Part shown: piece after piece, positions 6,917-23,876 of the stretch
How positions within the stretch are numbered: the stretch's first letter is position 1
Layout of the letters: each line of letters opens with the position of its first letter
IMG/VR virus record: IMGVR_UViG_3300038424_000251
Coordinates: 62,001-126,000 of that record
Reading direction: 5' to 3' (one strand)
Length of the DNA: 64,000 nucleotides
Translations under genes and position numbers: made by a program
Notes under the pieces: model-generated
Seen by the model: the letters and a program-made list of their open reading frames with translations, nothing else
Told to the model about the DNA's origin: nothing
The model's database searches: none

Positions 6917-7751
6917 AATAGATTTATTTGGTGGAACAGGTTTTATAGGTTCTCATTTTAAGAAGTTATATGGTGATGATGTGTATGTTCATCCAAGAAA
7001 TTCTGCCAAACCAGTTACAGACAACGTGTTATACATGATAAGTACCACCGACAATTATAATGTATATAGCGACTTGATGGTGGATATTGATACAAATTTG
7101 ACTCACTTATTAAGAGTTTTGGATTATTATAGAGATGATGAATCATTAAGAAAAAATTCTATTTTTAATTTTGTAAGTTCGTGGTTTGTGTATGGAAAAA
7201 TTTATGATTTACCTGCTAAAGAAACGTCTATTTGTAATCCCAAAGGATTTTATTCCATAACTAAAAAATGCGCAGAAGATTTATTAATATCTTTTTGTGA
7301 AACATATGATTTGAAGTACAGAATTTTTAGATTATGTAATGTCTATGGTATAGGTGATAAAGACGTATCGAAAAGAAAAAATGCTTTACAATACTTAATA
7401 AATGAAATAAAAAATAATAGACCTATACAATTATATTATGGTGGGAATTTTATCAGGGATTATATGGATGGAGATGATATTTGTAGAGCTATTAATTTGT
7501 GTATGAACGTTTCTAATGTCAATCAAATCATAAACATAGGAAGCGGAATACCACAAAATTTTGGAGAAATTATACATTCTGTAGTTAAAGAAACCGGTTC
7601 GACCAGTTTAATAACTGCTATAGACCCTTCTGATTTCCACAAGCATGTTCAAGTGAAAGATATGTATTTAGATATTACTAAACTTAAAAATTTGGGATTT
7701 ATACAACAGGTCAAAATATTTGATGGCATTAAAAAGATTTTAAATTCGTAA
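6909..7751 (+). CDS. NAD-dependent epimerase/reductase (nucleotide-sugar SDR)
   Basis: GGTGFIG, YSITK (YxxxK), RLCNVYG, RDY. Confidence 0.85.
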   Translation: MNKIDLFGGTGFIGSHFKKLYGDDVYVHPRNSAKPVTDNVLYMISTTDNYNVYSDLMVDIDTNLTHLLRVLDYYRDDESLRKNSIFNFVSSWFVYGKIYDLPAKETSICNPKGFYSITKKCAEDLLISFCETYDLKYRIFRLCNVYGIGDKDVSKRKNALQYLINEIKNNRPIQLYYGGNFIRDYMDGDDICRAINLCMNVSNVNQIINIGSGIPQNFGEIIHSVVKETGSTSLITAIDPSDFHKHVQVKDMYLDITKLKNLGFIQQVKIFDGIKKILNS

Positions 7752-8496
7752 CAGGGTCATGTTTTGGATAACTACCCCATTTATATTTGAAATACTCAAA
7801 TCCTTCTACTTCTTTTTTTCTTGTATTTTCTGCTTGTTCAGATGACCTAGTTCCAATACTGACAAAATGGTAAAAATTACAGTTGTAATTTCTATTCAAA
7901 TTCATTTTACATAAATTACATTTTAAGAAAAAGTCCCAATCAACAACGTTTCCACTAGGATATGTTTCATCCCAACCACCAACTTTTAGATAATTGGTTT
8001 TGGACATTAAAAACGGCAATGTTGACCCGCAAGAATCAACTTTATTTTGTCGCATTGTAGATTCCAATCTATAAAAATTATTCAAGTCAAATGTTTTTGC
8101 ATTTGTTCCAAAATCATATTTTATGAACTGCTTGAACATACTGTCATAAGGCTCTATTTGATTTGGACTTACAACATCGGTTTCCTTGTTGAAATTCTCT
8201 AGCAAAATTTTATCCCATTCTTTAGGGAATACGTTATCATCGTTGACAACTAAAATATTTTCAAAAGATGCATTATATACTCCAAAATTGGTTGACTTTG
8301 ATTGTCCATAATTACTTTCAAATATAATTGGAATTATTTGACTCTCATACTTTTTCAATATAGAATTGTTTATATCCAACGTTCCATCTATAACTACAAT
8401 TATCTCATTCTTGTAAATTTGGCTGCTTAATGCAGACCTGATGCACAAATCAAGATAATCGGGTTCTTTGTATGTTGGAATTATTACAGAAATCAT
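7729..8496 (-). CDS. glycosyltransferase family 2
   Basis: ISVIIPTY, VVIDG, NDDN, VGGWDE…DWDF. Confidence 0.85.
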   Translation of the reverse strand: MISVIIPTYKEPDYLDLCIRSALSSQIYKNEIIVVIDGTLDINNSILKKYESQIIPIIFESNYGQSKSTNFGVYNASFENILVVNDDNVFPKEWDKILLENFNKETDVVSPNQIEPYDSMFKQFIKYDFGTNAKTFDLNNFYRLESTMRQNKVDSCGSTLPFLMSKTNYLKVGGWDETYPSGNVVDWDFFLKCNLCKMNLNRNYNCNFYHFVSIGTRSSEQAENTRKKEVEGFEYFKYKWGSYPKHDPVTNLKSF

Positions 8497-9200
8497 AAAA
8501 TCTCATTGTCCCAATTTATTAGTGGCGCTAACCAAGGCAAATCGCCATGTGTGGAATAACTTGGAATCGGTGTTATCAATGTTCTTCCTTTGTCTCTTAA
8601 TTTCAAGAACATTCTGAAATCTTCGGGATAAGAACCAACTGTCCATTTTCTAAGTATAGGTTCATCTTCTCGTAATGTCTTTAATTTAGCTGCAAATGTC
8701 ATTGTTGTGGAATTGGTAAGTTTCCAATGACAGGATTTGCTTAGAAATACTTTGGTTATTTCACCACCATTTTCAATAAAAGGATTTCCACCTTTATCAC
8801 CATTCAAATATTTGTCAGGATGGTCATATAAGGAAATATAATCTGTACCTATATCAAATCCTTCTTCCATTATTGACTTTGAATTTTTACGGTGGATATA
8901 ATCATTTTCAACAAAATAGATTATTTCATCATCATTTTTTTGTTTTAATGCTAAATCTAACACTCTGTTGAAAGTCTGTGCGCTACTGCCCAAATTTGAT
9001 GAAATAATTGTATCTGCTGAAACTATATCTTGGACCATTTTATAAGTCTCATCGCAAACTCTATCAACTAAAATAAAAAAATTGTTGAGTTTATTATTGA
9101 GGAAATTTCGCTTAAAATTTTCGAGACAATTTTTATTGTTTATAAGGGGATGTTTTATTTTCTTATAACCAGCATCACTTAATCTGTAAAATATTATCAT
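8493..9200 (-). CDS. putative GT-A fold glycosyltransferase
   Basis: IIYFVENDYIH (DxD-like); cluster context. Confidence 0.6.
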   Translation of the reverse strand: MIIFYRLSDAGYKKIKHPLINNKNCLENFKRNFLNNKLNNFFILVDRVCDETYKMVQDIVSADTIISSNLGSSAQTFNRVLDLALKQKNDDEIIYFVENDYIHRKNSKSIMEEGFDIGTDYISLYDHPDKYLNGDKGGNPFIENGGEITKVFLSKSCHWKLTNSTTMTFAAKLKTLREDEPILRKWTVGSYPEDFRMFLKLRDKGRTLITPIPSYSTHGDLPWLAPLINWDNEIL

Positions 9201-9837
9201 AACTTTTATTTTTAAATATCAAATCTTCCTGTAATAGTTCACCATTCAAATAATGAGAATAAGGACTATCAACTACTATAAAATTTATATATTTCAAATA
9301 ATTTACAACCTCATCTTTTAATGGAGCGCCTTCGTTACAACTTTTTAAGGAAACTTCCAACAATAGATATTTTGATTTTTTTATGGTGTTTATTCCACCT
9401 TTTATGATATCTAATTCAGAACCTTGAGTATCTATTTTTATCAAATCGTATGTATCAGTTACAAGATTATCTAATATATTCATTGGAAGATATATAATTT
9501 CACAATTTTTATCATTAAAAAATTCTGATATTTCTCTATAAATTGAATTTCCTGTTGAACCTCTTTCTGTTTTATTGATATAGAATTTAACACTTGATTT
9601 CTCTTTATCTCCTAATAATGCTATTATGTAATGAATGCCCATACTCTTTAAAGCGTTTTCAAAAAAAGGATTAGCTTCAATCATTGTAAAACTAGCAGCC
9701 GGCCATACAGTTTTACATAAATTTGTAAACCATCCATTACTAGCACCAATATCCAAAATAGTATTTGGTGTAAAATTGAATTTATTTTTTATACCGTGTA
9801 AAGCACTTAAATCCATATTATACTTTTGTTTTATCAA
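9175..9837 (-). CDS. FkbM-family SAM methyltransferase
   Basis: LDIGASNG, EANP, LIKIDTQGSELDIIKG. Confidence 0.9.
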   Translation of the reverse strand: MIKQKYNMDLSALHGIKNKFNFTPNTILDIGASNGWFTNLCKTVWPAASFTMIEANPFFENALKSMGIHYIIALLGDKEKSSVKFYINKTERGSTGNSIYREISEFFNDKNCEIIYLPMNILDNLVTDTYDLIKIDTQGSELDIIKGGINTIKKSKYLLLEVSLKSCNEGAPLKDEVVNYLKYINFIVVDSPYSHYLNGELLQEDLIFKNKSYDNILQIK

Positions 9838-10765
9838 TCACATATTTTACTATATGTTCTGTTGTTAAATTATTTGTTAAATATGTATGTAGTTTATCAT
9901 TGATTTCGTGATATTTGTCATAATCAATTTCTATATCATTGAAAGTATTCAAGTCAAAATTTGTTATAGCATTTTTATCATTATATATGAATTTATTTTC
10001 TAATACAGTTTTATCAAATCCTTTGAATATATTAAAAACTTCTTCCAATGTTTTCTTAGGAAGCTTTTGTAAACTTTGTTTTGGACAATGTTTTATGTCT
10101 ATAAACAGTGGAATACATTTATTCATTATTATTTCATAATGACGAAGAGAATCCCAAGATGCTTTCTTCCAAGTATATCCAAACATAGATTGTTGGTAAT
10201 CTTCATAATAAGATTTTTCATCATTAAATACTAATGTTTCTATTATTCCCGGAATATTAGTTCCTATTAATTTATTTTTCTGTAATTCTCCTATATATAT
10301 TTTTTCTTTTGGTATTGAAAAATTTATAGGAATGACATCTTTTGTCTCATTTTCTATAAATGTTTTAAAATACAAACCTTTATTTAGTAGAGAATAATTC
10401 ACATCTGATGTATCACTACCATCTATAAAAACTATTTTATTTTTATCATAACAAGAAAATACTAAATCAATCAAATCCAAATTTCTATAAATTGCTCCAT
10501 AAATAACCAAGTCAAAATATTTATTTTTTATTTTATTTTCTATGTCTGTCCTATCTATGTTGTCGGATTTTTTCACAGTTCCACATAAAGTAAAACCTCT
10601 TCCATGAAAAGTATTAATTAGTGAAGATTTATTTATGTCATCATACATATACCATTGCGGATATAAGTCTATTATATCATCACCAAATAGAGATTTCAAT
10701 CCATGAAACAGAGAATCTGCCATGAAATCACTCATATGAAATTTAAAGATGTATAATATTTTCAT
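9818..10765 (-). CDS. putative glycosyltransferase (GT-B/exostosin-like)
   Basis: YYEDYQQSMFG…KKASWDSLRHYEIIMNKCIP; cluster context. Confidence 0.55.
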   Translation of the reverse strand: MKILYIFKFHMSDFMADSLFHGLKSLFGDDIIDLYPQWYMYDDINKSSLINTFHGRGFTLCGTVKKSDNIDRTDIENKIKNKYFDLVIYGAIYRNLDLIDLVFSCYDKNKIVFIDGSDTSDVNYSLLNKGLYFKTFIENETKDVIPINFSIPKEKIYIGELQKNKLIGTNIPGIIETLVFNDEKSYYEDYQQSMFGYTWKKASWDSLRHYEIIMNKCIPLFIDIKHCPKQSLQKLPKKTLEEVFNIFKGFDKTVLENKFIYNDKNAITNFDLNTFNDIEIDYDKYHEINDKLHTYLTNNLTTEHIVKYVIDKTKV

Positions 10766-10791: not shown

Positions 10792-11529
10792 TTATTTCCT
10801 GTATAGTTTAAATTCTGTTATACTTTGCCATTCTGTTAAGTCACCGTAATATTTTTTGAACATATCTGTTGGCACATGTTTATAACTTGAGTCGTTAAAT
10901 GGGATAGTGTATGTATAGTTTCCCCACTTTTTTGTAACATATTCAGCATTGTATGTTCTGGTTTCTGATGGAATCGGTGAGTTAAGATAAGTGGATGAAT
11001 TTCCGTTAAAGTAATGGGGTATGTTTAAACTGATTACTTTTACATCATTTAATTTACAACGGTATTTATAATCATTATCCTCACATCCAGCAAATAAAAA
11101 ATTTTCATCAAATCTTCCTACGGTGTTCCATGTATCTTTGTGTATTCCATATAAAGAGAATTCAAAAGAATTATCATAGGTTCCACATAATACTTTAGGA
11201 GATGTTTGTATGGTTATTTCATTTAAAATTTCTTCTGAAAATCTAGCATCTTCTTCTCCTATTATTATCTTATCTAACTTCATTGTATTAAATGCTATAT
11301 CACAGATTAAATTCCAACCAGCAGAACAGCAAATTTTCTTTGTGGTAAGATAGATGACATTATTTTTAATGTAATCAGGTATTTTTTGTTGGCCATTATC
11401 TATGAAGTACATTTTTGTATTTGGATTATCTTCATGTTTATACCATTCACAAAAATAGTCCACGGCATTATATCCTAATATGAATAAATTATTTTTTATA
11501 TTAAATTCTCTCATAACATGCCCAAGCAA
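10792..11529 (-). CDS. GT2-like glycosyltransferase
   Basis: FIDNG, SAGWN, EED, VGRFDENF..AGCEDNDY. Confidence 0.75.
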   Translation of the reverse strand: MLGHVMREFNIKNNLFILGYNAVDYFCEWYKHEDNPNTKMYFIDNGQQKIPDYIKNNVIYLTTKKICCSAGWNLICDIAFNTMKLDKIIIGEEDARFSEEILNEITIQTSPKVLCGTYDNSFEFSLYGIHKDTWNTVGRFDENFLFAGCEDNDYKYRCKLNDVKVISLNIPHYFNGNSSTYLNSPIPSETRTYNAEYVTKKWGNYTYTIPFNDSSYKHVPTDMFKKYYGDLTEWQSITEFKLYRK

Positions 11530-12133
11530 CTTGCTTAAAATCTGTTTTTGTATATTCTTTCAGATTATTTTTGGTTATAATATCTTTTATATTCTCATAT
11601 CTTATTTCTATCCAACCCCAACCTGAATATGGACCATAATCATGAGCCATTATAACATCTTGTGACTTTAGGAAATCTGCAAAATGATTAAATTCTTTTG
11701 GTTTGTCGCCACCGTCACACAATAAGCATACTTTTTTATTTGATGCTAGTATATCTTTTATGTATTTAATCGATGCTTCGGAAAAACAATCGTCATAAAT
11801 GCCTTTTATATTATTTTTATCAAAATATTCACGCAATCTATCTGAATATTCTTTACTCATATCTGTCATTTTTGTGGTATCATATAAATGGATATCAAAT
11901 GTATGAATATTATACGAAAGATTATGCTTTCTCTTTATTTCATTTAATATTATCGTAAGACCGCCTTTATTGGTTCCAATTTCTATTACTTCATCAAATT
12001 TCTTATCTATCATCAATTTCTCAAAATAATCAATTACAATAAACATTTGAGAAGCAATCCATTCTTCTTTGGAGTTTTTGATTGTAAAACCAAATCCTCC
12101 TCCAGTTCCCCATTTACTAATAATTTCTTCCAT
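11501..12133 (-). CDS. class I SAM-dependent methyltransferase (CmcI/Methyltransf_24-like)
   Basis: VIEIGTNKGG, TFDI, CDGG, AHDY. Confidence 0.75.
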   Translation of the reverse strand: MEEIISKWGTGGGFGFTIKNSKEEWIASQMFIVIDYFEKLMIDKKFDEVIEIGTNKGGLTIILNEIKRKHNLSYNIHTFDIHLYDTTKMTDMSKEYSDRLREYFDKNNIKGIYDDCFSEASIKYIKDILASNKKVCLLCDGGDKPKEFNHFADFLKSQDVIMAHDYGPYSGWGWIEIRYENIKDIITKNNLKEYTKTDFKQVAWACYERI

Positions 12134-12143: not shown

Positions 12144-13037
12144 TTATTTCATTATTTTTTTAATTTCATCAATAACTTCATCGTCTGTTAAATACGGGTC
12201 CAATACTATATGCCTTTTATCTTTAAAATAATAAATAGGTCCAAGTTTCGGTTCTTTTATTTTTTTTATCACTCCATTCCATCCGTATAGTTGAAGGACA
12301 AAATCGCCCGTTGTAATAGTTCTGCATCCAACGCCACAAGCCATATTACACAGACCGCCTTCTGCTCCAAGGAAAACATCACAATGCTTCATCAAAGAGC
12401 ACTCAAATAAAAGAGATTTCTGATTGCCATCTGTAATGGAAATAGTAGATACTTGTGGTGTTTTTGGGGGAAACCCTATTTCAACAAAATTGAATGTGTC
12501 AGATAAACAAGATAAAATATAGTTTGTATTTCTGTGTTTTCCACCATAACCGAAATCAGGAACATCAATTCCTAATTCATATTCTTTTTTTGTGAATAGA
12601 AAACTTCTTTCAGACCAATTGGCAGCATGTGCTACCACTTTTTTACCATTCTTTCTTAGTTCATCTATAATGTTTTTTGCTACTTCATCATAGGATGAGT
12701 CTGTATAGACAGTAAATTCTGTATCTGGATTTTTTACACTAGCCCATTTTTGGCACTCTAATGGTGGTGGTTCTAAGAAAGAAAACGGTTTCATGTTTAT
12801 TACTTCATCATAATTTTCTAATATGTCTTCGGGAACAGTTGGATATGGCGTTGGAAAAGGAAGTAATCTTACTTTGTCTATGTATGGATTATTAGATAAG
12901 AGTCTGTAAATTTGAGGGAAGGCTATCACATACTCTATTTCATCAAATTTCTTTTCTTCTTTTAATTTTTTAGCAATTGAACTCTGGAAAAAGATATCTC
13001 CAAAATATCCAAAAGTTATTATCAAACATTTATGCAT
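12144..13037 (-). CDS. GT9 (heptosyltransferase-like) glycosyltransferase
   Basis: FGDIF, LSNNPYIDKV, CDVFLGAEGGLCNMACGVG. Confidence 0.75.
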   Translation of the reverse strand: MHKCLIITFGYFGDIFFQSSIAKKLKEEKKFDEIEYVIAFPQIYRLLSNNPYIDKVRLLPFPTPYPTVPEDILENYDEVINMKPFSFLEPPPLECQKWASVKNPDTEFTVYTDSSYDEVAKNIIDELRKNGKKVVAHAANWSERSFLFTKKEYELGIDVPDFGYGGKHRNTNYILSCLSDTFNFVEIGFPPKTPQVSTISITDGNQKSLLFECSLMKHCDVFLGAEGGLCNMACGVGCRTITTGDFVLQLYGWNGVIKKIKEPKLGPIYYFKDKRHIVLDPYLTDDEVIDEIKKIMK

Positions 13038-13395
13038 ATGACTTTTCTTCTATTAGATTAGAATTGGTTTTTTCGTTGATTACTCTTTTTATCCATGATC
13101 TTGCATCATTATTGATATAAATTGTTCTAGCTATTTCAATAAATTCTTTATCAAATAATTGTTGGTCTTCCTTATATCGTATTTTATCTTCGGCATCCCA
13201 TAATATTTTGTTTACTGTTTTTAACGAAACTAAGAAAGAATTAATAGTAGGGTCTTCTAAATTAAAAATGGATTTTAATTGTTCTAGTTCTTTCAATACA
13301 TTTTTTCGTTTTTCTTCGTCGGTTATATTCTCTAATTTAATCATTAAAATAGATATTTTGTCAAGTATTTCTCCATTTGATACTTCAATCTTCAT
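13030..13395 (-). CDS. DUF6165-family protein
   Basis: EVSNGEILDKISIL.IK…LWDAEDKIR…IYINNDAR..IKR.IN…EEKSY. Confidence 0.8.
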   Translation of the reverse strand: MKIEVSNGEILDKISILMIKLENITDEEKRKNVLKELEQLKSIFNLEDPTINSFLVSLKTVNKILWDAEDKIRYKEDQQLFDKEFIEIARTIYINNDARSWIKRVINEKTNSNLIEEKSYA

Positions 13396-13399: not shown

Positions 13400-14119
13400 T
13401 TAAAATTTTATATTTATATTGTTTATTTTTAACCACTTAACGTTTTCCAAATCTGATTCAAATTTAGAAACATTACAAGAAGAATCATTAATGCCTTTCT
13501 TCCGTGAATATTCTCTATTTGCAAGAATAGCTCTATTTCGTAATTCATCGGGGTCATTTTGTGGTGGTTCGCTATTTGGATGATATAGAGAGTAAAACAA
13601 ACCTTCCTTGTTTCTATGCCATGCGTAACCATTTTCTATCAGTCTGTCTCTTGTATCCATATCGGAACATCCCCAACCAATAAAACATGGATTTAATCCA
13701 TTCATCTTATAGAATACTTTTCTACTAAATATGAATACCCCACCATAATGTTGACTAGCATCGTATTTAAAATGTTTATATCCACCGGGTATTTTAGATT
13801 CATCTAGTTCTTCACCATTTTCATTTAAAAAAATTACCTGCCTCACGGGTGACATGGGCGTATCTTCGTTTGGTAAATCATAACTTACATTATCAGAAGG
13901 AACATAATCTACATCGTGGAATATTAATGTATCACCAGTGGCAAAAGAGGCACCTGTATTATATAACGCATGCTTCTTGAATATTTCTTTGTCATCTTGT
14001 TCACATATGATTATTTCATAATTTTTATCTTTAAACTTAGTCTGAAATACAGGTAGAATAGTTTGTAAATGTGATTCCCTGTCCCTATATGAAATTATTA
14101 TTGAATATTTGTTATTCAT
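13400..14119 (-). CDS. GT7-like galactosyltransferase
   Basis: SYRDRESHL, EQDD, FHDVD, GGV, MNG…GWG..D. Confidence 0.8.
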   Translation of the reverse strand: MNNKYSIIISYRDRESHLQTILPVFQTKFKDKNYEIIICEQDDKEIFKKHALYNTGASFATGDTLIFHDVDYVPSDNVSYDLPNEDTPMSPVRQVIFLNENGEELDESKIPGGYKHFKYDASQHYGGVFIFSRKVFYKMNGLNPCFIGWGCSDMDTRDRLIENGYAWHRNKEGLFYSLYHPNSEPPQNDPDELRNRAILANREYSRKKGINDSSCNVSKFESDLENVKWLKINNINIKF

Positions 14120-17718: not shown

Positions 17719-19149
17719 TTACCTCAAAACTGAACCTATTACATTATTAAATTTAACTCTAGTGTTGGTTATATTAACATTATTTGTAATATCTAATTTA
17801 AATTTTACTTCCTGCTCAACAATATCCCTACATTTTACTATTTCTTCTGAATTTATAAAATCTGTAAATACATAAGACTTATAATTTCTCGGTATTCCTT
17901 TATAAAATTGTGAAGTTTTTGAATAATCTATATTTATAGAATACAATTTATCTTTTGTTTTCATTGCTTCATATTCCCATACATCATCATATTTGTGCGT
18001 TGATAAATCATAATAATGACTTCCGGGATATGGAGTTATTATAGACAAGTCCATATCTTCTACTTTATTGGTTATTAACCAATCTTTAATATCTAATATT
18101 GATTTTTTTGTTTCACCGGGATGACCACAAGACATCAATGCTTTTATTTTGATATTGTATTTTTTGCATAGACGCACAACATTCTCATTATCTTCTTTAT
18201 TTGATTTTTTGTTTATATTTACCAAAATTCTATCATTGGCAGATTCAAATCCACATAATAACCATCTGAATCCACAAATTTCCATTAAAGAAGCTTGTTC
18301 CTCATTAAAAAGTTCAGATTTTATAAATCCTCTAAAAGTAAATTTTATATTTAATGTATTTTGAAATTCTATAAGTTTTTTTAACAGTAATGGTAGATTC
18401 TTATTGACATTTAATTCATCATCATAAAACATAAATGATTTATAACCATACGTCTTGTATAAGAATTCTACCTCTTTAACTACAGAATCTACTGACCTAT
18501 TTCTGATTTTTCTTAGGTTATTGCTAAATCTTCCACAACAAAAAGCACAATTAAACGGACATCCTAGTTGAGATATTATGCTAGTACAAGGTTCTTCATC
18601 TATAAAAAAATGATATGATTTTAAATCAACCAAATTCCTATTTGAAAATGGTAATTTATCTAATTGAACATTAGTTAAAAACAATCGTTTATCTGTATTA
18701 GCGTCTATAATTTTGTTATCAAACAACTTATTATTTAAATAATTAAGTATTGATAATTCTCCATCTCCAATAAAAATCGTATCAAAATTATTTAACATAT
18801 GATTCTTATTAGTTTCTATTCGTTGATTTTGATTCTGTGGTGAAAAACACGATGTAGCATGTGGACCACCCAATATTTTTTTAACTTCTTGAGGAATATG
18901 TTTAATTAGTTCTATAACGTGTGGATATTGTGGAGTGCTGGATGTAAATCCGATTATATCAAACTTTTTATGATTTAATACAATAGAAAATGTTTCTTCA
19001 TAATTTTCTATTCCTGACAAATCTAAAACATTAATAGGATATTCTGTATAAGTTTTTGTAACATTAGCTACACTAAGTATTCCAAGATGTGGCAGTGACT
19101 TTTCATCAATTAAGAATGGTGACGGTGGTATTACAAATAAGATGTTCAT
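17719..19149 (-). CDS. cobalamin-binding radical SAM protein (class B methyltransferase-like)
   Basis: PHLG, ILGGPHAT, GDGE, GCPFNCAFC, YDDE, GFESAN, PGET, PYPGS. Confidence 0.9.
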   Translation of the reverse strand: MNILFVIPPSPFLIDEKSLPHLGILSVANVTKTYTEYPINVLDLSGIENYEETFSIVLNHKKFDIIGFTSSTPQYPHVIELIKHIPQEVKKILGGPHATSCFSPQNQNQRIETNKNHMLNNFDTIFIGDGELSILNYLNNKLFDNKIIDANTDKRLFLTNVQLDKLPFSNRNLVDLKSYHFFIDEEPCTSIISQLGCPFNCAFCCGRFSNNLRKIRNRSVDSVVKEVEFLYKTYGYKSFMFYDDELNVNKNLPLLLKKLIEFQNTLNIKFTFRGFIKSELFNEEQASLMEICGFRWLLCGFESANDRILVNINKKSNKEDNENVVRLCKKYNIKIKALMSCGHPGETKKSILDIKDWLITNKVEDMDLSIITPYPGSHYYDLSTHKYDDVWEYEAMKTKDKLYSINIDYSKTSQFYKGIPRNYKSYVFTDFINSEEIVKCRDIVEQEVKFKLDITNNVNITNTRVKFNNVIGSVLR

Positions 19150-19160: not shown

Positions 19161-19832
19161 CTATATTACATTATGACCTTTATTATCTTCAACACTAAAC
19201 AGTTGATTATATCTTAGATTGGTTTGTATTTGTTTTTCTATTGTTTTGTCATGATAAAGAGCTAAATCTTCATCTGCTGGTAGAAAAGCATATTGGTCAT
19301 GGCCAACAATTTTCTCGTGTAATTTTCTATCCCATTTGATTTTTTCTGGAATTCTTTTGTAAATACGACTTTGAAAATCAGGCCAATTAACTATATATCT
19401 GTTTTCACAAAATGGAGAAAATGTTAATCTCCATCCCCATTGTTTAGCATGTTCAGTTGTAACGCCTCTAAAATCATTAATTCTTGGAACGTATATCAAT
19501 TCCACATTTAAATTAGTAGAAATGATGTCCCTCACGTTGAAAATTAATGTTTCAGATGGTAGTTCATCTCCGTCAATTTGGAAAACCCAATCACCAGAAC
19601 ATTTTTCATTTCCATAATTTTTATGTGACCCATAATCATTATTTAGTAAATGCTGAAATACGGTTATTTTTCCCTTAGCTTTGTTTATAATTTTTTTGGT
19701 TTCTTCATTATCTGAAAAATCATCCAATACAACAATTTCATCATCATCAAACTTATTATTTATTAATCGTTCCAAAAGTTTGATTAAAGTATCGGTTTCA
19801 TTATGAATAGTAACTAGGTAAGATATTTTCAT
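19161..19832 (-). CDS. glycosyltransferase family 2
   Basis: ISYLVTIHNE, VLDDFS, FQIDGDE, WPDFQSR, LHE. Confidence 0.85.
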   Translation of the reverse strand: MKISYLVTIHNETDTLIKLLERLINNKFDDDEIVVLDDFSDNEETKKIINKAKGKITVFQHLLNNDYGSHKNYGNEKCSGDWVFQIDGDELPSETLIFNVRDIISTNLNVELIYVPRINDFRGVTTEHAKQWGWRLTFSPFCENRYIVNWPDFQSRIYKRIPEKIKWDRKLHEKIVGHDQYAFLPADEDLALYHDKTIEKQIQTNLRYNQLFSVEDNKGHNVI

Positions 19833-21217
19833 AGTACCGAGCTAGTTACTGAATTGGTTGCTTCAGAACTTGAACTTGTTATTGGTGAAGGTGGATTTAT
19901 AGGTTTTAATTTCGGTAATTCTATCTTTTTCAATTTTGGTAAAATTAGCTTTTGTTCTGTAGCAAATTTAGGAACGTATTTTTCCAGAAGTTCGTAAAAT
20001 CTTTTATCCATAGCTTGAATAGAAAATTCTTCAACATTTTTTTTGCGAAGTTGTTCAGCTTTTTCAAGGAATGCTTTATAAAAATTAAAACAATTTCTCA
20101 TAGATTCCATTGCTTTAGGATAATCAACTGTAAACCATGATGATTCTTTAATCAGCCATTCATTTGCGCAATCTTCTGGAATTTTTTTTATTTCACCATG
20201 TAATAATTTACAAAATTTTGAGTCAAGAAAATCCAAATGACCGCTCCAATTAGAAGCTAATACAGGTTTACCACTTAAAGTAGAAAGCAATAATGGAAGA
20301 CCAAATCCTTCACCATGAGTGAAAGAAATATGTGCTTTAATCTTTGGATGATTATAGAGAGCATTCATTTCTGATTCCGTTAATTCGCCATATAGAATAT
20401 AAACGTTGGGAAGGTCTTTGGTATTTTTTTCCTGTTCAACTATGGACCTAACGGATTTTAATCGGTTAATCATATCGTGTTTATCCATGTTACATATTGC
20501 TGCTCCATTAGTCTTAATAACCAGAGCTGGTTTTCTTTTAGGTCCCATATTGGAAAATGTTATTAAGAAGGTTTTAATCAAATTACCAATATCTTTTCTG
20601 TCATTAAACAAACCACCACTTGTCCATTGACCAACAAAAAGAAAACAAAAATCTTCTTTAATAACAGACAATTCTTCTTCAATTCTTGGTTCAAATGATT
20701 TGTCATTTCCGTAAATTGATGTATCTGCTCCCCAAAATAACACTTCTATTGGTTTTATAGATTTTAATATTATAGGTGATTGGTTTGGTGCGGCTGGTTT
20801 TTGATATAATGGTTCTTCAAATACACTTTTAGCATGATTTGAAGTAACAATATTAAAATTCATTCTATTCAATCCTTCAATCCAATCTGTTCTGGCTAAG
20901 GTCGTCTCAATACCAGCAGTTATACCAATATTATATTTTGCTGGTGGTTGAAATTCATTAGGAATAGAACACTGAATAAATAATTCTGGTTGTTTAGACA
21001 ATGGTTGTCTAACAATTCTTTTGTATAATTCTTGCTCTGCAGAATCAGTTACATCTGAAAATAAATATTTTCTACTGCAATTACCCCAACGAGTAGGAAC
21101 TATCATCAAGTCATATTTGTCATATCTGAGCAAGCTTTTAGCTAAGGCTAATCCCAGATCACCATAGCCTGACCTAGTCCAAACCGGGGATTGAAAAATA
21201 CATATTGGTTTGTTCAT
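19829..21217 (-). CDS. GT4 glycosyltransferase
   Basis: SGYG, FLFVGQW…RKD, HGEGFGLP…KPVLASNWSGHLDF. Confidence 0.85.
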   Translation of the reverse strand: MNKPICIFQSPVWTRSGYGDLGLALAKSLLRYDKYDLMIVPTRWGNCSRKYLFSDVTDSAEQELYKRIVRQPLSKQPELFIQCSIPNEFQPPAKYNIGITAGIETTLARTDWIEGLNRMNFNIVTSNHAKSVFEEPLYQKPAAPNQSPIILKSIKPIEVLFWGADTSIYGNDKSFEPRIEEELSVIKEDFCFLFVGQWTSGGLFNDRKDIGNLIKTFLITFSNMGPKRKPALVIKTNGAAICNMDKHDMINRLKSVRSIVEQEKNTKDLPNVYILYGELTESEMNALYNHPKIKAHISFTHGEGFGLPLLLSTLSGKPVLASNWSGHLDFLDSKFCKLLHGEIKKIPEDCANEWLIKESSWFTVDYPKAMESMRNCFNFYKAFLEKAEQLRKKNVEEFSIQAMDKRFYELLEKYVPKFATEQKLILPKLKKIELPKLKPINPPSPITSSSSEATNSVTSSVL

Positions 21218-21227: not shown

Positions 21228-21926
21228 TCATTTCTCTCTTTCTTTTATCATGGTTTCATATTTTTTTGGAGCGGGGATTTCTGATGCTCCTGTTTTCTTC
21301 CATCTATCCATTAAATTATTAGCTTCTTTAGGAGATTCAATTTTTTTTTCTGTAATATGAATAGTATTGGTACCACTGCTGCCAAATCCACCAGAACCAC
21401 GTTCGGTAGTTGTCAAGTCAGCAACTACAACCCAATCAATGGGGTTTGTTACTTCTGACACAAGTTGACCGATTTTGTCGCCTTTTTTGTAGATTTTTTC
21501 CATATTGATTTTACCTCTTAAAGTTTTTCTTCCCCAACCAAATTCTTTTGTATTTACAGTTTCATTAATTGGAACAACACAAGAAAACATGTCATCCGGT
21601 TGCCAGATATATTTAAAACAAAGAAGTAATTCGCCTCTATAATCATTATCAATTAACCCAATACTGTTTGCTAGAATCAAATTATATTTTCTCAAGCTTG
21701 AACGTGGAAAAATAAGCGTATGATAATTTTGATTGTATGTGTCTGTTTGTGGAGAAATGAATAACCCTGTTTTATATTCAATATAATCTATTGATTTCCA
21801 ATCATCTCCGTCTTGTTTTCCAATAATTTTGGGGTCTTCCAATGCTATAACGTCATAGCCAGAAGATTGTGAAGTAGCTGCTTGAGGTATAACTAAACCA
21901 TCTGAATTTTTAACGTGTATTTTCAT
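21228..21926 (-). CDS. dut: trimeric dUTPase
   Basis: SSGYD, PRSS, GLIDNDYRGEL, GDKIGQL, RGSGGFGSSG. Confidence 0.95.
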   Translation of the reverse strand: MKIHVKNSDGLVIPQAATSQSSGYDVIALEDPKIIGKQDGDDWKSIDYIEYKTGLFISPQTDTYNQNYHTLIFPRSSLRKYNLILANSIGLIDNDYRGELLLCFKYIWQPDDMFSCVVPINETVNTKEFGWGRKTLRGKINMEKIYKKGDKIGQLVSEVTNPIDWVVVADLTTTERGSGGFGSSGTNTIHITEKKIESPKEANNLMDRWKKTGASEIPAPKKYETMIKEREK

Positions 21927-21965: not shown

Positions 21966-22172
21966 CTATAATTTTATTTCTAAAAGGTCTATGGTTGTAG
22001 ATGATTTATCATATATGATAATAGGTAATTTTTTGTTACTAATTCCTATTTCTTTTGACATTTCATCACCTATTTTATTGGCATATTTTTTATAATCTTC
22101 CTGTTTTCCGAAACGATTACTATCAAGACCTATCAATAAAACCGTCTTAGTTTTGGGTTTTATTTTTTTCAT
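21966..22172 (-). CDS. hypothetical protein
   Basis: 68 aa ORF coupled to the upstream GT. Confidence 0.55.
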   Translation of the reverse strand: MKKIKPKTKTVLLIGLDSNRFGKQEDYKKYANKIGDEMSKEIGISNKKLPIIIYDKSSTTIDLLEIKL

Positions 22173-23671
22173 ATATTTGCACTTTCTATTTGTTGTTTAA
22201 TTTTTTCTTGGTCAAATTTGGGAATTTCAAATCCCATTCCACCCGGCATCAAATTACCTACATAATCATTTTCGGTAAAAATACTAAAAGGTTTTACGGA
22301 CTTGAAATTATTCAAAGTATAATCCATACATTTGATAAATTCATTACACATGTTTTCAGAATTGATACCACCTTCATTCATTGCCCATCTTCTTCCTTCT
22401 TCACCACATTTTGTTCTTTTTTCATCTCCCATCAAATACCAGTACATTAATCCTTCAGCCGCATCTTCCCAACGTGTCATATCATCAAAAATATATGGTG
22501 TTGGAATAGAACCCTGAATGCATTGAACGAGTGGATATACAGGATACGCCCATATACCATGTTTCTTATATTTACCTATATTATTAGAACCAAAATGTAA
22601 ATCAAATTCTATGGGTGAACCATCATCCTTGGTTTGCCCTATTTGGTCTTGAAGTCCACCAGTTACAGCTGTAATAATAGGTGTGCCAGCCATAAGTGAT
22701 TCTGCAGTTGAAAGACCAAATCCTTCATTTGATGACAGATTAATAGTGACATCAGCAATGTTATATAATAAGTTTAAATCTTCTGGTGGATATTTTGCTG
22801 TTGAAAACATAACATCATAGTTTGGACAGAAGGCTTCTTTAACGGCCAGCAAATCTGTTCCAGCTTCTTGACGAACTTCTGTATGTAATATCAATATACA
22901 TTTTTCTGATTCTTCTTTTGGAAGATTGTCACAAAATGCTTTATAGGCTAACATGATATTACTTGTTCTCTTTCTTTGAACATTTCGTGAATTGTAAAAG
23001 ATTATGAAGTTATAATCCTTATTATGAAACATATCTTTGCGTCGTTTTTGTAAATTGGTATCATCTTTTGGAAGAGGATGGAATATTTTACTATTAATTC
23101 CATGAGGAACATAATGTAATACAGTCTTATTATCTGTATCTTTAGAATCGATGGTGGAAACTTTATCTGGTCCTAACACCCATTTGTTTATGTTATACGT
23201 TTGTTTGCTGATTGACATTAATAAATCACATGATTCGTAGTATGGTCTGTTGTACATTGGAAATGGGATATCATCCCAAATATTCAAGTAAGTTAAGGGC
23301 ATTTTAGAACGAATTTGCCTTTCTATAGCATATAACCATCCCCAGAATCTTGGATCTGTAAAATGAAGAAGTGCATCAGGTTTTTCTCTCTCAACAATAC
23401 TAAATAAAATTTCTTCATTTCCATAACCATCAACAGGATATAAAGTTACTTTTGCATCTTTAATGCCTGAAATTTGTGCGGTAGCTGCATCCATGTTGAC
23501 TATTTTACCTTTTTCAGGATGTTGAATTGCACCGGCAATCTGAACCCAATCATAATGTTTGACGGTCCCTAAAACGACTTCTCTTGTCATAGTAGCCACA
23601 CCTGAATGCATCCTCAAGTCATCGGACAAACATATTATTTTTGGTTTAGCCATAATGATTTTAAGAACCAA
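22169..23671 (-). CDS. GT4 glycosyltransferase
   Basis: HSGVA, VPHG, SRNVQRK, YNIADVTINLSSNEGFGLSTAESLMAGTP. Confidence 0.9.
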   Translation of the reverse strand: MVLKIIMAKPKIICLSDDLRMHSGVATMTREVVLGTVKHYDWVQIAGAIQHPEKGKIVNMDAATAQISGIKDAKVTLYPVDGYGNEEILFSIVEREKPDALLHFTDPRFWGWLYAIERQIRSKMPLTYLNIWDDIPFPMYNRPYYESCDLLMSISKQTYNINKWVLGPDKVSTIDSKDTDNKTVLHYVPHGINSKIFHPLPKDDTNLQKRRKDMFHNKDYNFIIFYNSRNVQRKRTSNIMLAYKAFCDNLPKEESEKCILILHTEVRQEAGTDLLAVKEAFCPNYDVMFSTAKYPPEDLNLLYNIADVTINLSSNEGFGLSTAESLMAGTPIITAVTGGLQDQIGQTKDDGSPIEFDLHFGSNNIGKYKKHGIWAYPVYPLVQCIQGSIPTPYIFDDMTRWEDAAEGLMYWYLMGDEKRTKCGEEGRRWAMNEGGINSENMCNEFIKCMDYTLNNFKSVKPFSIFTENDYVGNLMPGGMGFEIPKFDQEKIKQQIESANI

Positions 23672-23876
23672 ATGAACCAGTAGAACTTAGAACAGGAACA
23701 ATATAATTGTTTATAAGTGTTCTGAATGATGAAGAAGAGGAAGTATCGCCTACATAAAGGTGTACACATTTCTCAACGAATGTTTGAAGGGTAAGATTAT
23801 TTTGAATACCTAATATCTTAAAAGAATCATAAAGGCTCTTTTCAATCTTTACCGTAGTAGCTGTTTTTGTTTTCAT
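23661..23876 (-). CDS. putative ribbon-helix-helix regulator (start reassigned to MKTKTATTVKI)
   Basis: TTVKIEKSLYDSFK…LTLQTFVEKCV beta-alpha-alpha pattern; upstream inverted repeat. Confidence 0.55.
   Translation of the reverse strand: MKTKTATTVKIEKSLYDSFKILGIQNNLTLQTFVEKCVHLYVGDTSSSSSFRTLINNYIVPVLSSTGSFGS

What the first reader, a model, noticed from the sequence alone, without database searches (positions are those of the whole stretch)
7729..23876. 16-kb co-directional glycosylation island in a phage
Seen: about ten GT-like genes (GT2, GT4, GT7, GT9 and unclassified), two SAM methyltransferases, DUF6165 and two radical SAM enzymes, headed by an RHH-like gene. No flippase, polymerase or multi-TM GT-C is present. 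Inference: a soluble pathway that builds a complex methylated glycan on virion proteins or on DNA, rather than host O-antigen conversion.
Basis: partly seen in the sequence, partly recalled or inferred. Interest (0 to 1): 0.6.

Follow-up and report, generated by a model that had tools for sequence, protein, structure and literature searches.

The report
Jumbo phage sugar-building gene island
A 365-kb phage from peat carries an 18-kb block of soluble sugar-adding and sugar-modifying enzymes; three of them are conserved across a whole phage lineage and the rest vary from phage to phage, and the block most likely coats the phage's own proteins rather than its DNA, though this is untested.

Summary
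Window 7729-23876 is one co-directional minus-strand block in a 365,299-bp phage genome. It holds about ten glycosyltransferase (GT)-like genes, an FkbM methyltransferase, DUF6165 and two radical SAM enzymes. No protein in it has a membrane segment.

New here:
- The island has a conserved core: an RHH-like gene, a 500-aa GT4, a 462-aa GT-B and a 223-aa GT2. This core sits beside a PD-(D/E)XK nuclease, in the same order, in about 60 viral contigs and in two cultured phages (Microcystis phage Mel-JY01 and Flavobacterium phage immuto).
- A hypervariable cassette follows the core.
- Two convergent sugar-nucleotide genes (5618-7751) belong to the island.
- One radical SAM enzyme is fused to a GT-B domain.

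DNA is an unlikely target. The genome has no ThyA-type, TET/JBP or C5-methylase gene. Published LC-MS of immuto DNA reports dA, dC, dT and fdPreQ1, and no glycosylated nucleoside.

Virion-protein glycosylation is my favoured reading (about 0.4). A real rival (about 0.3) is remodelling of the host's LPS core, which also needs only soluble GTs. The nearest cellular homologues of the core GT2 sit in LPS-core-like loci.

I rate it a new variant of a known kind, of moderate interest.

The parts
5618..6916 (+). DegT/DnrJ/EryC1-type sugar aminotransferase, convergent with the island. It makes an NDP-amino-deoxy-sugar.
   Evidence: Pfam PF01041, E 9e-79. Homologues occur in the variable cassettes of related phages.
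6909..7751 (+). Short extended-SDR NDP-sugar epimerase/reductase with an N-terminal GxxGxxG motif.
   Evidence: Pfam Epimerase and GDP_Man_Dehyd. The motif is visible in the translation.
7729..8496 (-). GT2 glycosyltransferase, last gene of the block.
   Evidence: PF00535, 75 bits. 47% identical to the last GT of the Mel-JY01 cluster.
8493..9200 (-). Probable GT-A-like protein of a very widespread, mostly unannotated family.
   Evidence: 3,798 homologues, a few carrying PF00535. Profile A7 gives a weak match to TarS (5tze, E 0.003). A homologue is present in Mel-JY01.
9175..9837 (-). FkbM-family SAM methyltransferase (sugar O-methylation).
   Evidence: PF05050, 49.5 bits.
9818..10765 (-). Conserved protein of unknown fold. 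The family has 637 members, mostly unnamed metagenomic proteins.
   Evidence: Profile A6 finds nothing in the PDB. No Pfam match.
10792..11529 (-). GT-like protein matching a PHROG 'galactosyl transferase' family.
   Evidence: phrog_29879, E 1e-13.
11501..12133 (-). Possible second SAM methyltransferase (weak evidence).
   Evidence: Methyltransf_23 and Methyltransf_24, E about 0.2.
12144..13037 (-). GT9-like (heptosyltransferase-like) lead only.
   Evidence: The ESM Atlas places it near viral clusters in which 36% of members carry PF01075. The Pfam GT9 HMM finds nothing in the genome.
13030..13395 (-). DUF6165 protein, also weakly DUF4254-like. DUF4254 sits with GT9 genes in the Bacteroidales loci examined here.
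   Evidence: PF19662, 47.5 bits; PF14063, E 9e-5. DUF4254 and GT9 each occur in 6 of 98 ORFs from 11 Bacteroidota loci.
13400..14119 (-). GT7-type (beta-4-galactosyltransferase-like) GT-A enzyme.
   Evidence: PF02709 at 47 bits and PF13733 at 45 bits, both above cut-off.
14112..14969 (-). Unclassified protein of viral families, with a faint Nucleotid_trans lead.
   Evidence: No Pfam, PHROG or NCBIfam match.
14966..16705 (-). Fusion protein. Residues 1-260 are a radical SAM domain (C39-x3-C43-x2-C46). Residues 261-579 are a GT-B-fold domain that exists elsewhere as a stand-alone 320-aa protein.
   Evidence: PF04055; motif. Homologues cover only residues 261-579. AlphaFold pLDDT 92. Best fold matches are POGLUT1/Rumi, POGLUT2 and SdgB. 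Independent contigs from two other runs span the junction without indels.
16726..17715 (-). Weak GT1/GT4-like protein.
   Evidence: PF00534, E 0.0015. Homologues lie directly after the core GT2 in two related loci.
17719..19149 (-). B12-binding (class B) radical SAM enzyme, HpnJ/BchE/PhpK-like, with motif C197-x3-C201-x2-C204. It probably C-methylates or rearranges a sugar.
   Evidence: PF04055 at 77 bits plus a B12-binding domain. TIGR03471 HpnJ at 1.6e-29, below the equivalog cut-off. Motif.
19161..19832 (-). Core GT2 (223 aa) with a D-x-D-E motif. It belongs to the GmaR-like subgroup.
   Evidence: PF00535. Present in 54 related loci. Profile A3 matches GmaR (22ao) over its full length at 1.3e-17. 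40% identical to immuto gp178.
19829..21217 (-). Core GT-B glycosyltransferase (462 aa).
   Evidence: Present in 62 related loci. AlphaFold pLDDT 88. Best fold match is chlorovirus NY-2A B736L (3oy2, E 1.4e-15). 41% identical to immuto gp180.
21228..21926 (-). Trimeric-type dUTPase with an insertion of about 40 aa. It is a nucleotide-metabolism gene embedded in the core, not a glycan enzyme.
   Evidence: PF00692; phrog_135; PDB dUTPases at 3e-14. Found at this position in 15 related loci.
21966..22172 (-). 68-aa ORF of unknown function.
22169..23671 (-). Core GT4 glycosyltransferase (500 aa). It is split into two ORFs in some relatives.
   Evidence: PF00534 at 47 bits. Present in 65 related loci. 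Profile A2 matches B736L (3oy2) at 1.8e-16. 46% identical to immuto gp181.
23664..23876 (-). Small conserved RHH-like protein heading the core. Its C-terminal tail ends in a conserved S-G-S-type motif.
   Evidence: Present in 26 related loci. RHH_4 E 0.18. The top PDB profile hits are two RHH proteins at E 0.45-0.7, which is not significant.
27962..28909 (-). PD-(D/E)XK nuclease, the conserved left neighbour of the GT core across the lineage. In this phage it is separated from the core by an inserted HNH-Mom-unknown segment.
   Evidence: PF12705. Present in 60 related loci, always just upstream of the core.

Best explanation
The island is a phage-encoded, fully cytoplasmic glycosylation system. 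It most likely O-glycosylates the phage's own (virion) proteins.

Proposed mechanism:
- A conserved module lays down an invariant inner part of the glycan on an acceptor that is conserved across the phage lineage. The module is an RHH-like regulator, a 500-aa GT4, a 462-aa GT-B and a 223-aa GmaR-like GT2.
- A hypervariable cassette then elaborates the glycan. In this phage the cassette holds six to eight more GT-like proteins, an FkbM O-methyltransferase, a B12-radical SAM enzyme and a radical SAM-GT-B fusion. A convergent aminotransferase/SDR pair supplies an amino-deoxy sugar.
- The result would be a strain-specific, methylated outer glycan.

Shown here: the gene content, the solubility of the proteins, the conserved-core-plus-variable-cassette architecture, the absence of known enzymes that create a DNA acceptor, and the folds. 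Inferred: the acceptor (protein), the order of the steps and the chemistry.
For: 1. The core triad and its order beside the PD-(D/E)XK nuclease are conserved at 38-85% identity in about 60 viral loci and in viral-looking contigs binned into MAGs. They are also conserved in two cultured phages whose hosts belong to different phyla: Mel-JY01 on Microcystis and immuto on Flavobacterium. Structural proteins are conserved to a similar degree. A conserved GT set argues for a conserved acceptor, which points to a phage-own molecule.

2. DNA is unlikely. The genome has no ThyA homologue, Tet_JBP, C5-MTase or DpdA. Immuto virion DNA gave only dA, dC, dT and fdPreQ1 (PMC10516641).

3. There are no membrane proteins, priming transferase, flippase or polymerase in the island, in the genome, or in 148 cassette ORFs from 19 relatives.

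4. The best solved relatives are enzymes of viruses or of protein glycosylation:
- chlorovirus B736L for both GT-B core enzymes;
- the flagellin O-GlcNAc transferase GmaR for the core GT2, over its full length with the D-x-D-E and H-E motifs aligned;
- the protein O-glucosyltransferases POGLUT1/2 and SdgB for the GT-B domain fused to the radical SAM enzyme.

5. The cassettes of relatives carry deoxy-, amino-, fucosyl- and methyl-sugar genes that differ from phage to phage. Glycan gene sets that differ between close relatives are reported for giant-virus capsid and fibril glycosylation; I cite this from memory, not from a paper read here.

6. Candidate acceptors exist. Seven fibre-like proteins carry long Ser-rich S-[AS]-S-[WY]-[AS] repeats. 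The same repeat is present in the immuto tail spike.

7. No integrase was found, so classical lysogenic serotype conversion is unlikely.
Against: - There is no direct evidence that any glycan sits on any virion protein of this lineage.
- GT family and fold do not fix the acceptor. Pyle et al. found DNA-acting phage GTs that resemble LPS and capsid GTs.
- The closest cellular homologues of the core GT2 (33-40% identity, closer than GmaR) lie in LPS-core-like loci.
- The island sits in the replication module beside PolB, not with the late structural genes. I found no late-promoter signal there, and expression timing is unresolved.
- The Ser-rich repeats do not track the core: they are absent from Mel-JY01 and from a complete 157-kb relative.
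Confidence: 0.4

Rival explanations
1. Host envelope remodelling of the LPS-core (lipooligosaccharide) type. During infection the soluble phage GTs add sugars to lipid A-core, or to another lipid-linked intermediate, at the cytoplasmic face of the inner membrane. The host's MsbA/Lpt or Wzx machinery exports the product. The cell surface changes, giving superinfection exclusion or keeping progeny from adsorbing to debris.
For: - Cellular homologues of the core GT2 lie in Bacteroidales, Sphingobacterium and Chryseobacterium loci rich in GT4, GT2/GT7C, GT9, DUF4254, Wzy_C (O-antigen ligase) and Kdo/WaaP-kinase genes.
- The phage cassette has the same family mix: GT7, DUF6165/DUF4254-like and a GT9-like lead.
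- From general knowledge of WaaC/F/G-type enzymes, LPS-core assembly needs no flippase, polymerase or membrane GT. The absence of these therefore does not argue against this reading.
- Many-GT clusters in large cyanomyoviruses are conventionally read this way (PMC12801897).
Against: - The core triad is conserved between phages of Cyanobacteria and Bacteroidota, whose inner LPS cores differ.
- No lipid A-, Kdo- or heptose-specific enzyme, ligase or kinase was found in the phage. The Pfam GT9 model is negative.
- The GT9-like and DUF6165 genes have no direct sequence match to the bacterial locus genes.
- The phage has no integrase.
- This interpretation of the cyanophage clusters has never been tested either.
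Confidence: 0.3
2. DNA hypermodification: the GTs build an oligosaccharide on a modified base of the phage DNA as protection against restriction.
For: - The island lies among replication and DNA-modification genes: PolB, PD-(D/E)XK, dUTPase, a Mom-family protein, an N6-methylase and an HNH endonuclease.
- Phage DNA glycans of several sugars are known.
Against: - The 365-kb genome has no ThyA-type enzyme, no Tet_JBP and no C5-MTase. All known routes need one of these (PMC13326640; bioRxiv 10.1101/2023.12.21.572611).
- The DNA of immuto, which has the same core, showed only canonical dA, dC and dT plus fdPreQ1.
- T4 beta-GT is not among the listed fold matches of the core GT-B.
Confidence: 0.06
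3. Another soluble acceptor: a free or nucleotide-linked oligosaccharide or glycoside, a host or phage non-virion protein, or an RNA. In the first case the product could be a metabolite that manipulates the host or blocks a defence.
For: - Everything is soluble.
- Radical SAM and B12-radical SAM enzymes are typical of natural-product sugar tailoring; the NCBIfam neighbours are AprD4, PhpK and HpnJ.
- The 500-aa core GT4 touches the 'GT4 in conflict systems' family exactly at its cut-off.
Against: No scaffold-forming enzyme (PKS, NRPS, aminocyclitol or nucleoside synthase) was found in the island. Ten GTs for a small molecule would be unusual.
Confidence: 0.15

Closest known systems
[quoted passage not shown]
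   Same: True orthologues. Both have the PD-(D/E)XK nuclease, a small ORF, a GT4 of about 480-500 aa, a GT-B of about 440-460 aa and a GT2 of about 210-220 aa in the same order, at 33-47% identity. A cassette of aminotransferase, methyltransferase, epimerase and further GT genes follows.
   Different: Their cassettes are shorter (about 6-11 kb), have different gene content, and have no annotated radical SAM enzyme in them. In this phage the nuclease is separated from the core by an HNH-Mom-unknown insertion. No function has been shown for any of these clusters.
'Moraphage' core glycosyltransferases (Perez-Hernandez et al. 2025, PMC12619734)
   Same: A lineage of large aquatic phages with PolB, T4-like structural genes and a dUTPase. 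Four GT orthogroups are reported in its core genome, and the predicted hosts are Bacteroidota.
   Different: I could not verify that this phage belongs to that lineage. At 365 kb it is larger than their maximum of 307 kb. The paper does not describe the core-plus-cassette architecture or a target.
Cell-wall/LPS gene clusters of large cyanomyoviruses (P-SSM2, S-SCSM1, S-SCSM2R; PMC12801897)
   Same: Many GTs (up to 13) together with NDP-sugar epimerases in one large aquatic myovirus. GT2, GT10, GT11 and GT25 families appear, and a mom gene is also present. The target is unknown.
   Different: Orthology with the core triad was not shown. Those clusters include KdsA/KdsB- and export-related genes that are absent here.
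Virion glycosylation in chloroviruses and Mimiviridae and in mycobacteriophages (Freeman et al. 2023)
   Same: Virus-encoded soluble GTs act in the cytoplasm on capsid, fibril or tail proteins. The glycans are methylated or contain amino or deoxy sugars, and the gene sets vary between strains. Both GT-B core enzymes here have chlorovirus B736L as their best solved relative.
   Different: Those viruses have a eukaryotic host, or only one or two GTs in the case of mycobacteriophages. No glycan has been shown on virions of this lineage. What I say about those systems comes partly from memory; Freeman et al. was seen only as a citation.
Phage DNA glycosylation (T4 alpha/beta-GT; RB69/DLP3 arabinosyl-5hoC; 5mYOX-linked GTs)
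   Same: Phage-encoded soluble GT-A and GT-B enzymes, sometimes several in series, sit next to replication genes.
   Different: Those systems always pair the GTs with a ThyA homologue or with a C5-MTase plus a TET-like dioxygenase. None of these is present here.
Bacteroidota LPS-core-like GT loci
   Same: They hold the nearest cellular homologues of the core GT2 and the same family mix: GT4, GT2/GT7C, GT9 and DUF4254.
   Different: The bacterial loci also hold an O-antigen-ligase-like membrane protein, a Kdo/WaaP kinase and ABC ATPases. The phage has none of these.

Membership tests
GT2 (Pfam PF00535), for 7729-8496 and 19161-19832 | HMM score above the gathering cut-off, and a GT-A D-x-D-type motif | tested here: met
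   75.4 and 57.7 bits against a cut-off of 23.3. In the core GT2 the D-x-D-E motif aligns with that of GmaR.
GT4/GT1 GT-B (PF00534), for 22169-23671 and 19829-21217 | HMM score above the cut-off, and a two-Rossmann GT-B fold | tested here: met
   22169-23671 scores 47.3 bits against a cut-off of 26.4. 19829-21217 scores only 21 bits, below the cut-off, but its model (pLDDT 88) matches GT4 structures at E 1e-15 to 1e-11.
GT7 (PF02709/PF13733), for 13400-14119 | Both the N- and C-terminal GT7 domains above their cut-offs | tested here: met
   47.2 and 45.3 bits against cut-offs of 23 and 27.
GT9 heptosyltransferase (PF01075), for 12144-13037 | HMM match to Glyco_transf_9 | tested here: not met
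   A six-frame search of the whole genome with PF01075 gives no match at E 0.001, while the control rings in 4 genomes. Only an ESM Atlas feature-space lead supports GT9.
Radical SAM superfamily, for 14966-16705 and 17719-19149 | PF04055 above the cut-off, and a CxxxCxxC cluster motif | tested here: met
   33.1 and 76.9 bits against a cut-off of 29.5. Motifs at C39/43/46 and C197/201/204. A B12-binding domain is weakly present in the second enzyme (23.3 bits, below the 32.1 cut-off).
Phage DNA glycosylation pathway | An enzyme that creates the hydroxyl acceptor: a ThyA-type hydroxymethylase or hydroxylase, or a C5-MTase plus a TET/JBP dioxygenase | tested here: not met
   PF00303, PF12851 and PF00145 have no match in the 365-kb genome. 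Caveat: the Tet_JBP control rang in no control genome. Only a ThyX-like gene is present.
Phage DNA glycosylation pathway | Glycosylated nucleosides in virion DNA | not testable with these tools
   Indirect evidence only. The orthologous-core phage immuto gave dA, dC, dT and fdPreQ1 by LC-UV-MS/MS (PMC10516641).
Wzx/Wzy- or GtrABC-type O-antigen conversion | A flippase, polymerase, polytopic Gtr/GT-C protein or priming phosphoglycosyl transferase | tested here: not met
   No hydrophobic segment in any island protein. The genome-wide maximum is 4 segments in one protein. Only 3 of 148 cassette ORFs of relatives have a single segment. No integrase.
LPS-core (LOS) type assembly | Soluble GTs acting on lipid A-Kdo, usually alongside GT9, a WaaL ligase and a core kinase | tested here: inconclusive
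   The soluble GT set is compatible. The bacterial homologues' loci have GT9, DUF4254, Wzy_C and a Kdo kinase. The phage itself lacks a ligase, a kinase and an HMM-detectable GT9. The acceptor cannot be tested in silico.
Virus-encoded virion protein glycosylation | Soluble virus-encoded GTs, and a glycan on capsid, tail or fibre proteins | not testable with these tools
   The first part is met. The second needs virion glycoproteomics.
Ribbon-helix-helix regulators, for 23664-23876 | A significant match to an RHH family, and a beta-alpha-alpha pattern | tested here: inconclusive
   RHH_4 E 0.18. The profile's two best PDB hits are RHH proteins, but at E 0.45-0.7. The conserved block has an RHH-like pattern in the alignment.

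The most novel reading that the evidence does not exclude
A lineage-wide phage protein O-glycosylation system. A conserved three-GT 'primer' module is coupled to a rapidly swapping glycan cassette that includes radical SAM and B12-dependent sugar chemistry and a radical SAM-GT fusion. It would give large aquatic and peat phages a strain-specific glycan coat on Ser-rich fibre repeats. This would be a bacterial-virus counterpart of giant-virus fibril glycosylation, and it is testable in the cultured phage immuto.
Probability: 0.3. Interest if true: 0.75.

Novelty: new variant of a known kind. Interest (0 to 1): 0.55.

Why it matters
Large GT clusters in aquatic phages are usually annotated as 'LPS genes' or assumed to be DNA glucosylation, without any test.

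This analysis shows that in one widespread lineage, reaching from peat jumbo phages to cultured Flavobacterium and Microcystis phages, three GTs are core genes in a fixed position. They are followed by a cassette that varies the way an O-antigen locus does.

Published nucleoside data for one member already argue against DNA as the target. That narrows the question to virion protein against host lipid-linked glycan, and it names a cultured phage in which the question can be settled.

If the target is the virion, glycan coats would be a general and diversifying feature of large phages, with consequences for host recognition, stability in peat and water, and antigenicity.

The radical SAM-GT-B fusion and the B12-radical SAM enzyme would also point to new sugar chemistry.

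Tried and rejected
- **Expression timing.** I found about 95 copies of a strong sigma-70-like early promoter (GCTTGAC, then a T-rich spacer, then an extended -10), mostly at 130-280 kb. None lies in the island. A T4-type late motif, TATAAATA, is only about 2-fold enriched upstream of genes. The generic promoter scan of the island found fewer sites than shuffled sequence. The island's expression class therefore stays unresolved.
- **Pattern search with the 579-aa radical SAM protein in viral contigs.** It found nothing. The word search later showed that only the C-terminal domain is widespread.
- **Profile-profile comparison of the unknown families.** Comparing A5 and A6 with each other and with the GT4 profile gave nothing. 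PDB sequence-profile searches with A5 and A6 were blank.
- **Direct sequence link between phage cassette genes and bacterial LPS-core-like loci.** I looked for a link from the phage's GT9-like and DUF6165 genes to the bacterial GT9 and DUF4254 genes and found none.
- **Ser-rich fibre repeats as a correlate of the GT core.** They are present in immuto and in one 303-kb relative. They are absent from Mel-JY01, from a complete 157-kb relative and from three T4-like controls. They are therefore not a lineage-wide partner of the core.
- **A 7-deazaguanine pathway like immuto's.** It is absent here: no TGT/DpdA and no QueC.
- **Paper on Mel-JY01.** None is in the library.
- **Not run.** I did not run complex prediction, because I claim no specific binding pair.

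Full report
**What is there**

The window is bases 62001-126000 of a 365,299-bp virus record that CheckV scores as complete. Its G+C content is 33%. The genome encodes a family B DNA polymerase whose best isolate match is Microcystis phage Mel-JY01, at 44% identity. About 53 genes are shared with that phage, including terminase, portal, prohead protease, major capsid protein, tail sheath, tail tube and baseplate genes. It is therefore a jumbo, distantly T4-like myovirus. The same DNA recurs in at least 24 peat and wetland metagenome runs from 2017-2021. No integrase was found.

**Checking the observation**

Window 7729-26479 is a single minus-strand block of 22 tightly packed genes in a genome that is mostly plus-strand.

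Pfam, PHROG, NCBIfam, PDB-profile, fold and language-model evidence give, from the 3' end to the 5' end of the block:
- GT2 (7729-8496)
- a probable GT-A protein of a very widespread family (8493-9200)
- FkbM methyltransferase (9175-9837)
- a conserved unknown (9818-10765)
- a PHROG 'galactosyl transferase' (10792-11529)
- a possible second methyltransferase (11501-12133; E about 0.2 only)
- a GT9-like lead (12144-13037)
- DUF6165 (13030-13395)
- GT7 (13400-14119)
- an unknown viral protein (14112-14969)
- a 579-aa radical SAM protein (14966-16705)
- a weak GT4-like protein (16726-17715)
- a B12-binding, HpnJ-like radical SAM enzyme (17719-19149)
- GT2 (19161-19832)
- a 462-aa GT-B (19829-21217)
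- a dUTPase (21228-21926)
- a 68-aa ORF (21966-22172)
- a 500-aa GT4 (22169-23671)
- a small RHH-like protein (23664-23876)

Beyond that lie an HNH/NUMOD4 homing endonuclease, a Mom-family protein and a 470-aa unknown. These are not glycan genes.

Convergent with the block, at 5618-7751, are a DegT-type sugar aminotransferase and a short SDR epimerase/reductase. They belong to the island functionally.

Every Pfam GT1 and GT2 match of the whole genome lies in this island. No island protein has a hydrophobic segment, and no protein of the genome has more than four.

The caveats are these:
- The GT9 call is not supported by the Pfam model.
- The second methyltransferase and the RHH assignment are weak.
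- The dUTPase and the two flanking sugar-nucleotide genes were missed.

**The radical SAM fusion**

Homologues of the 579-aa protein are all about 320 aa long and match only residues 261-579. The gene is therefore a fusion of a radical SAM domain (CxxxCxxC at residues 39-46) with a domain that is a stand-alone protein elsewhere.

That domain folds confidently (pLDDT 92) into a GT-B-like structure. Its best solved neighbours are the protein O-glucosyltransferases POGLUT1/Rumi and POGLUT2 and the SD-repeat O-GlcNAc transferase SdgB (E 6e-7 to 1e-5, TM about 0.45).

Independent contigs from two other peat runs span the junction without any insertion or deletion. The fusion is therefore not an assembly artefact.

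**Architecture across relatives**

This is the main new finding. Searches of viral contigs with the 500-aa GT4 and the 462-aa GT-B returned 65 loci. Comparing all genes of the region against these loci gave the following counts:

| Gene | Loci with a match |
|---|---|
| 500-aa GT4 | 65 |
| 462-aa GT-B | 62 |
| PD-(D/E)XK nuclease (window 27962-28909) | 60 |
| 223-aa GT2 | 54 |
| RHH-like gene | 26 |
| dUTPase | 15 |
| Each gene from 9175 to 17715 | 0 to 2 |

The order is invariant: nuclease, small gene, GT4, (dUTPase), GT-B, GT2. Identity ranges from 38% to 85%, on contigs up to 303 kb.

Downstream of the GT2, every relative continues with same-strand genes at about 90% coding density, but the content differs. 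A Pfam tally of 148 such ORFs from 19 non-redundant loci shows:
- GDP-mannose dehydratases and epimerases (12 each)
- GT2 (11)
- RmlD (9)
- Methyltransf_24 (7) and FkbM (6) methyltransferases
- DegT aminotransferases (5)
- GT11 (4) and GT10 (2) fucosyltransferases
- sugar C-methyltransferases, transketolase-type enzymes, UDP-glucose dehydrogenases, hexapeptide acetyltransferases and two radical SAM enzymes

Only 3 of the 148 ORFs have even one hydrophobic stretch.

The same core plus a different cassette is present in two cultured phages:
- Mel-JY01, at 83441-89690.
[quoted passage not shown] Its core genes are 46%, 41% and 40% identical to the three GTs here.

It is also present in viral-looking contigs binned into MAGs.

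The island is thus a conserved three-GT core followed by a hypervariable glycan cassette, much like the conserved and variable parts of a surface-polysaccharide locus, but entirely soluble.

**What the core enzymes resemble**

- The profile of the 500-aa GT4 matches the chlorovirus NY-2A glycosyltransferase B736L best (1.8e-16).
- The AlphaFold model of the 462-aa protein (pLDDT 88) is a GT-B fold, again closest to B736L (E 1.4e-15). T4 beta-glucosyltransferase is not among the listed matches.
- The profile of the 223-aa GT2 matches the Listeria flagellin O-GlcNAc transferase GmaR over its whole length (1.3e-17), with the D-x-D-E and H-E motifs aligned. SunS and chondroitin synthase match only over the N-terminal half.

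**The target: DNA**

All known phage DNA glycosylation routes start from a hydroxylated pyrimidine. That base is made by a ThyA homologue or by a C5-methyltransferase plus a TET-like dioxygenase, and these genes usually cluster with the GTs (PMC13326640; bioRxiv 10.1101/2023.12.21.572611).

Six-frame HMM searches of the whole genome find no ThyA family member, no Tet_JBP and no C5 DNA methylase. The Tet_JBP search had no positive control. Only a ThyX-like gene is present.

More tellingly, virion DNA of immuto has been analysed by LC-UV-MS/MS. The authors report canonical dA, dC and dT, with fdPreQ1 replacing dG, and no glycosylated nucleoside (PMC10516641). Immuto has the orthologous core. Our phage lacks that 7-deazaguanine pathway.

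I therefore put DNA at about 0.06. The caveat is that heavily glycosylated nucleotides can escape digestion.

**The target: host envelope**

There is no integrase and no flippase, polymerase, priming transferase or polytopic GT anywhere in the genome. This excludes the classical Gtr- and Wzy-type serotype conversion systems.

One scan of prokaryote genomes with the GT2 profile returned two kinds of hits. The first were phage-like contigs with the full core. The second were 33-40% identical homologues in Bacteroidales, Paludibacteraceae, Sphingobacterium and Chryseobacterium chromosomes.

A Pfam tally of 98 neighbouring ORFs in 11 such loci shows GT4/GT1 (17), GT2 (14), DUF4254 (6), GT9 (6), Wzy_C/O-antigen ligase (6), GT7C (4) and Kdo/WaaP kinase (3). 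The Sphingobacterium olei locus is a run of eight soluble GTs.

That is the signature of an LPS-core or lipooligosaccharide locus. From general knowledge, such cores are built by soluble or peripheral GTs directly on lipid A-Kdo and exported by host machinery. The phage cassette also has a GT7, a DUF6165/DUF4254-like protein and a GT9-like lead.

This rival deserves real weight (about 0.3). Against it:
- The core is conserved between phages of Cyanobacteria and Bacteroidota, whose inner cores differ.
- The phage has no ligase, kinase or HMM-detectable GT9.
- The GT9-like and DUF6165 genes show no direct similarity to the bacterial locus genes.

**The target: the phage's own proteins**

I favour this reading (about 0.4), for these reasons:
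- A GT set conserved across hosts of different phyla points to a phage-own acceptor, and DNA is disfavoured.
- The best solved relatives of four island enzymes come from a capsid-glycosylating virus or from protein O-glycosylation systems.
- The strain-to-strain cassette turnover resembles what is known for giant-virus and mycobacteriophage virion glycans. I cite that from memory and from citations seen.

Looking for possible acceptors, I found that seven fibre-like proteins of this genome carry long arrays of a Ser-rich S-[AS]-S-[WY]-[AS] repeat. They lie at genome coordinates 14386-19287, 298984-303053, 356970-357524 and 360634-365124. One protein has 17 copies.

The repeat also occurs in the 1054-aa tail spike gp101 of immuto and in one 303-kb relative. 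It does not occur in Mel-JY01, in a complete 157-kb relative or in three T4-like control phages. It is a candidate acceptor, not a correlate of the core.

Nothing here shows a glycan on a virion. Homology does not fix GT acceptors: Pyle et al. found DNA-acting GTs that look like LPS and capsid GTs.

**Expression**

The genome has about 95 copies of a strong sigma-70-like early promoter, none of them in the island. I could not define a late promoter. The generic scan is uninformative in this AT-rich DNA. The island's expression timing is open.

**Comparison with what is known, and novelty**

Many-GT clusters are known in large cyanomyoviruses, where they are read, without test, as cell-wall modification genes (PMC12801897). 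A recent description of 'moraphages' lists four GT orthogroups among the core genes of a lineage of large aquatic phages with Bacteroidota hosts (PMC12619734). This phage may belong near that lineage, but I could not verify it. The immuto and Mel-JY01 clusters are annotated but uncharacterised.

New here are:
- the fixed three-GT core next to the nuclease, combined with a swapping cassette, across about 60 or more phages;
- the evidence against DNA as the target;
- the LPS-core-like ancestry of the core GT2;
- the radical SAM-GT-B fusion and the B12-radical SAM enzyme in a phage glycan cassette.

I class it as a new variant of a known kind. Interest is 0.55: a specialist would not be shocked, but the target question is now directly testable in a cultured phage.

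Noticed in passing
genome G000:C1 14386-19287, 298984-303053, 356970-357524, 360634-365124 (outside the window): Seven fibre-like proteins carry arrays of a Ser-rich S-[AS]-S-[WY]-[AS] repeat, up to 17 copies in one protein. The same repeat occurs in the immuto tail spike gp101 and in one 303-kb relative. It is absent from Mel-JY01, a 157-kb relative and three T4-like controls. It is a possible O-glycosylation acceptor or a fibre structural repeat.
   Followed up: partly
window 1384-2724 and 4137-4877 (+): Two phage genes match the Druantia defence protein family DruA (PF14236; E 6e-26 and 2e-22). DruA-like genes in a phage are unexpected. They could be decoys or counter-defence genes.
   Followed up: no
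window 23936-26479 (-): An HNH/NUMOD4 homing endonuclease, a Mom-family DNA-modification protein (PF25680, 84 bits) and a 470-aa unknown are inserted between the GT core and its usual PD-(D/E)XK neighbour. The Mom homologue and the unknown are shared only with the closest relatives. This suggests an adenine modification of the phage DNA that is independent of the glycan genes.
   Followed up: partly
genome-wide, mostly G000:C1 130000-280000: About 95 copies of a very regular promoter occur, usually 36-39 nt before the ATG of small genes. It reads R-S-GCTTGAC-W-TTT, then a spacer, then an extended -10 of the form TGnTAnAnT. The -35/-10 type is that of canonical sigma-70, not the Bacteroidota sigma-A consensus. 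This bears on the unknown host.
   Followed up: partly
window 23664-23876 (-) and homologues: The small RHH-like protein ahead of the GT core ends in a conserved tail, (S/T)-S-G-S-(F/L), in most relatives. Its function is unknown. It could be a regulatory tail, or an acceptor or recognition peptide.
   Followed up: partly
window 32984-34594 (+): An Eco57I/N6-type DNA methyltransferase lies just downstream of PolB. It is shared with only two related loci.
   Followed up: no
NC_055915.1 26884-28155 (immuto): Immuto is annotated with an unusually long (423-aa) ThyA-type thymidylate synthase, although its DNA shows canonical dC and dT. Immuto also uses family A polymerases where this phage uses PolB, yet it keeps the nuclease-GT core.
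   Followed up: no
PP395634.1 4750-8430 and 11243-13162 (Mel-JY01): In Mel-JY01 a 1226-aa protein annotated 'methyltransferase FkbM' and a 639-aa 'cytidylyltransferase-like' protein sit inside the structural module, next to a structural protein and the terminase. Glycan-type enzymes are thus encoded among virion genes.
   Followed up: no
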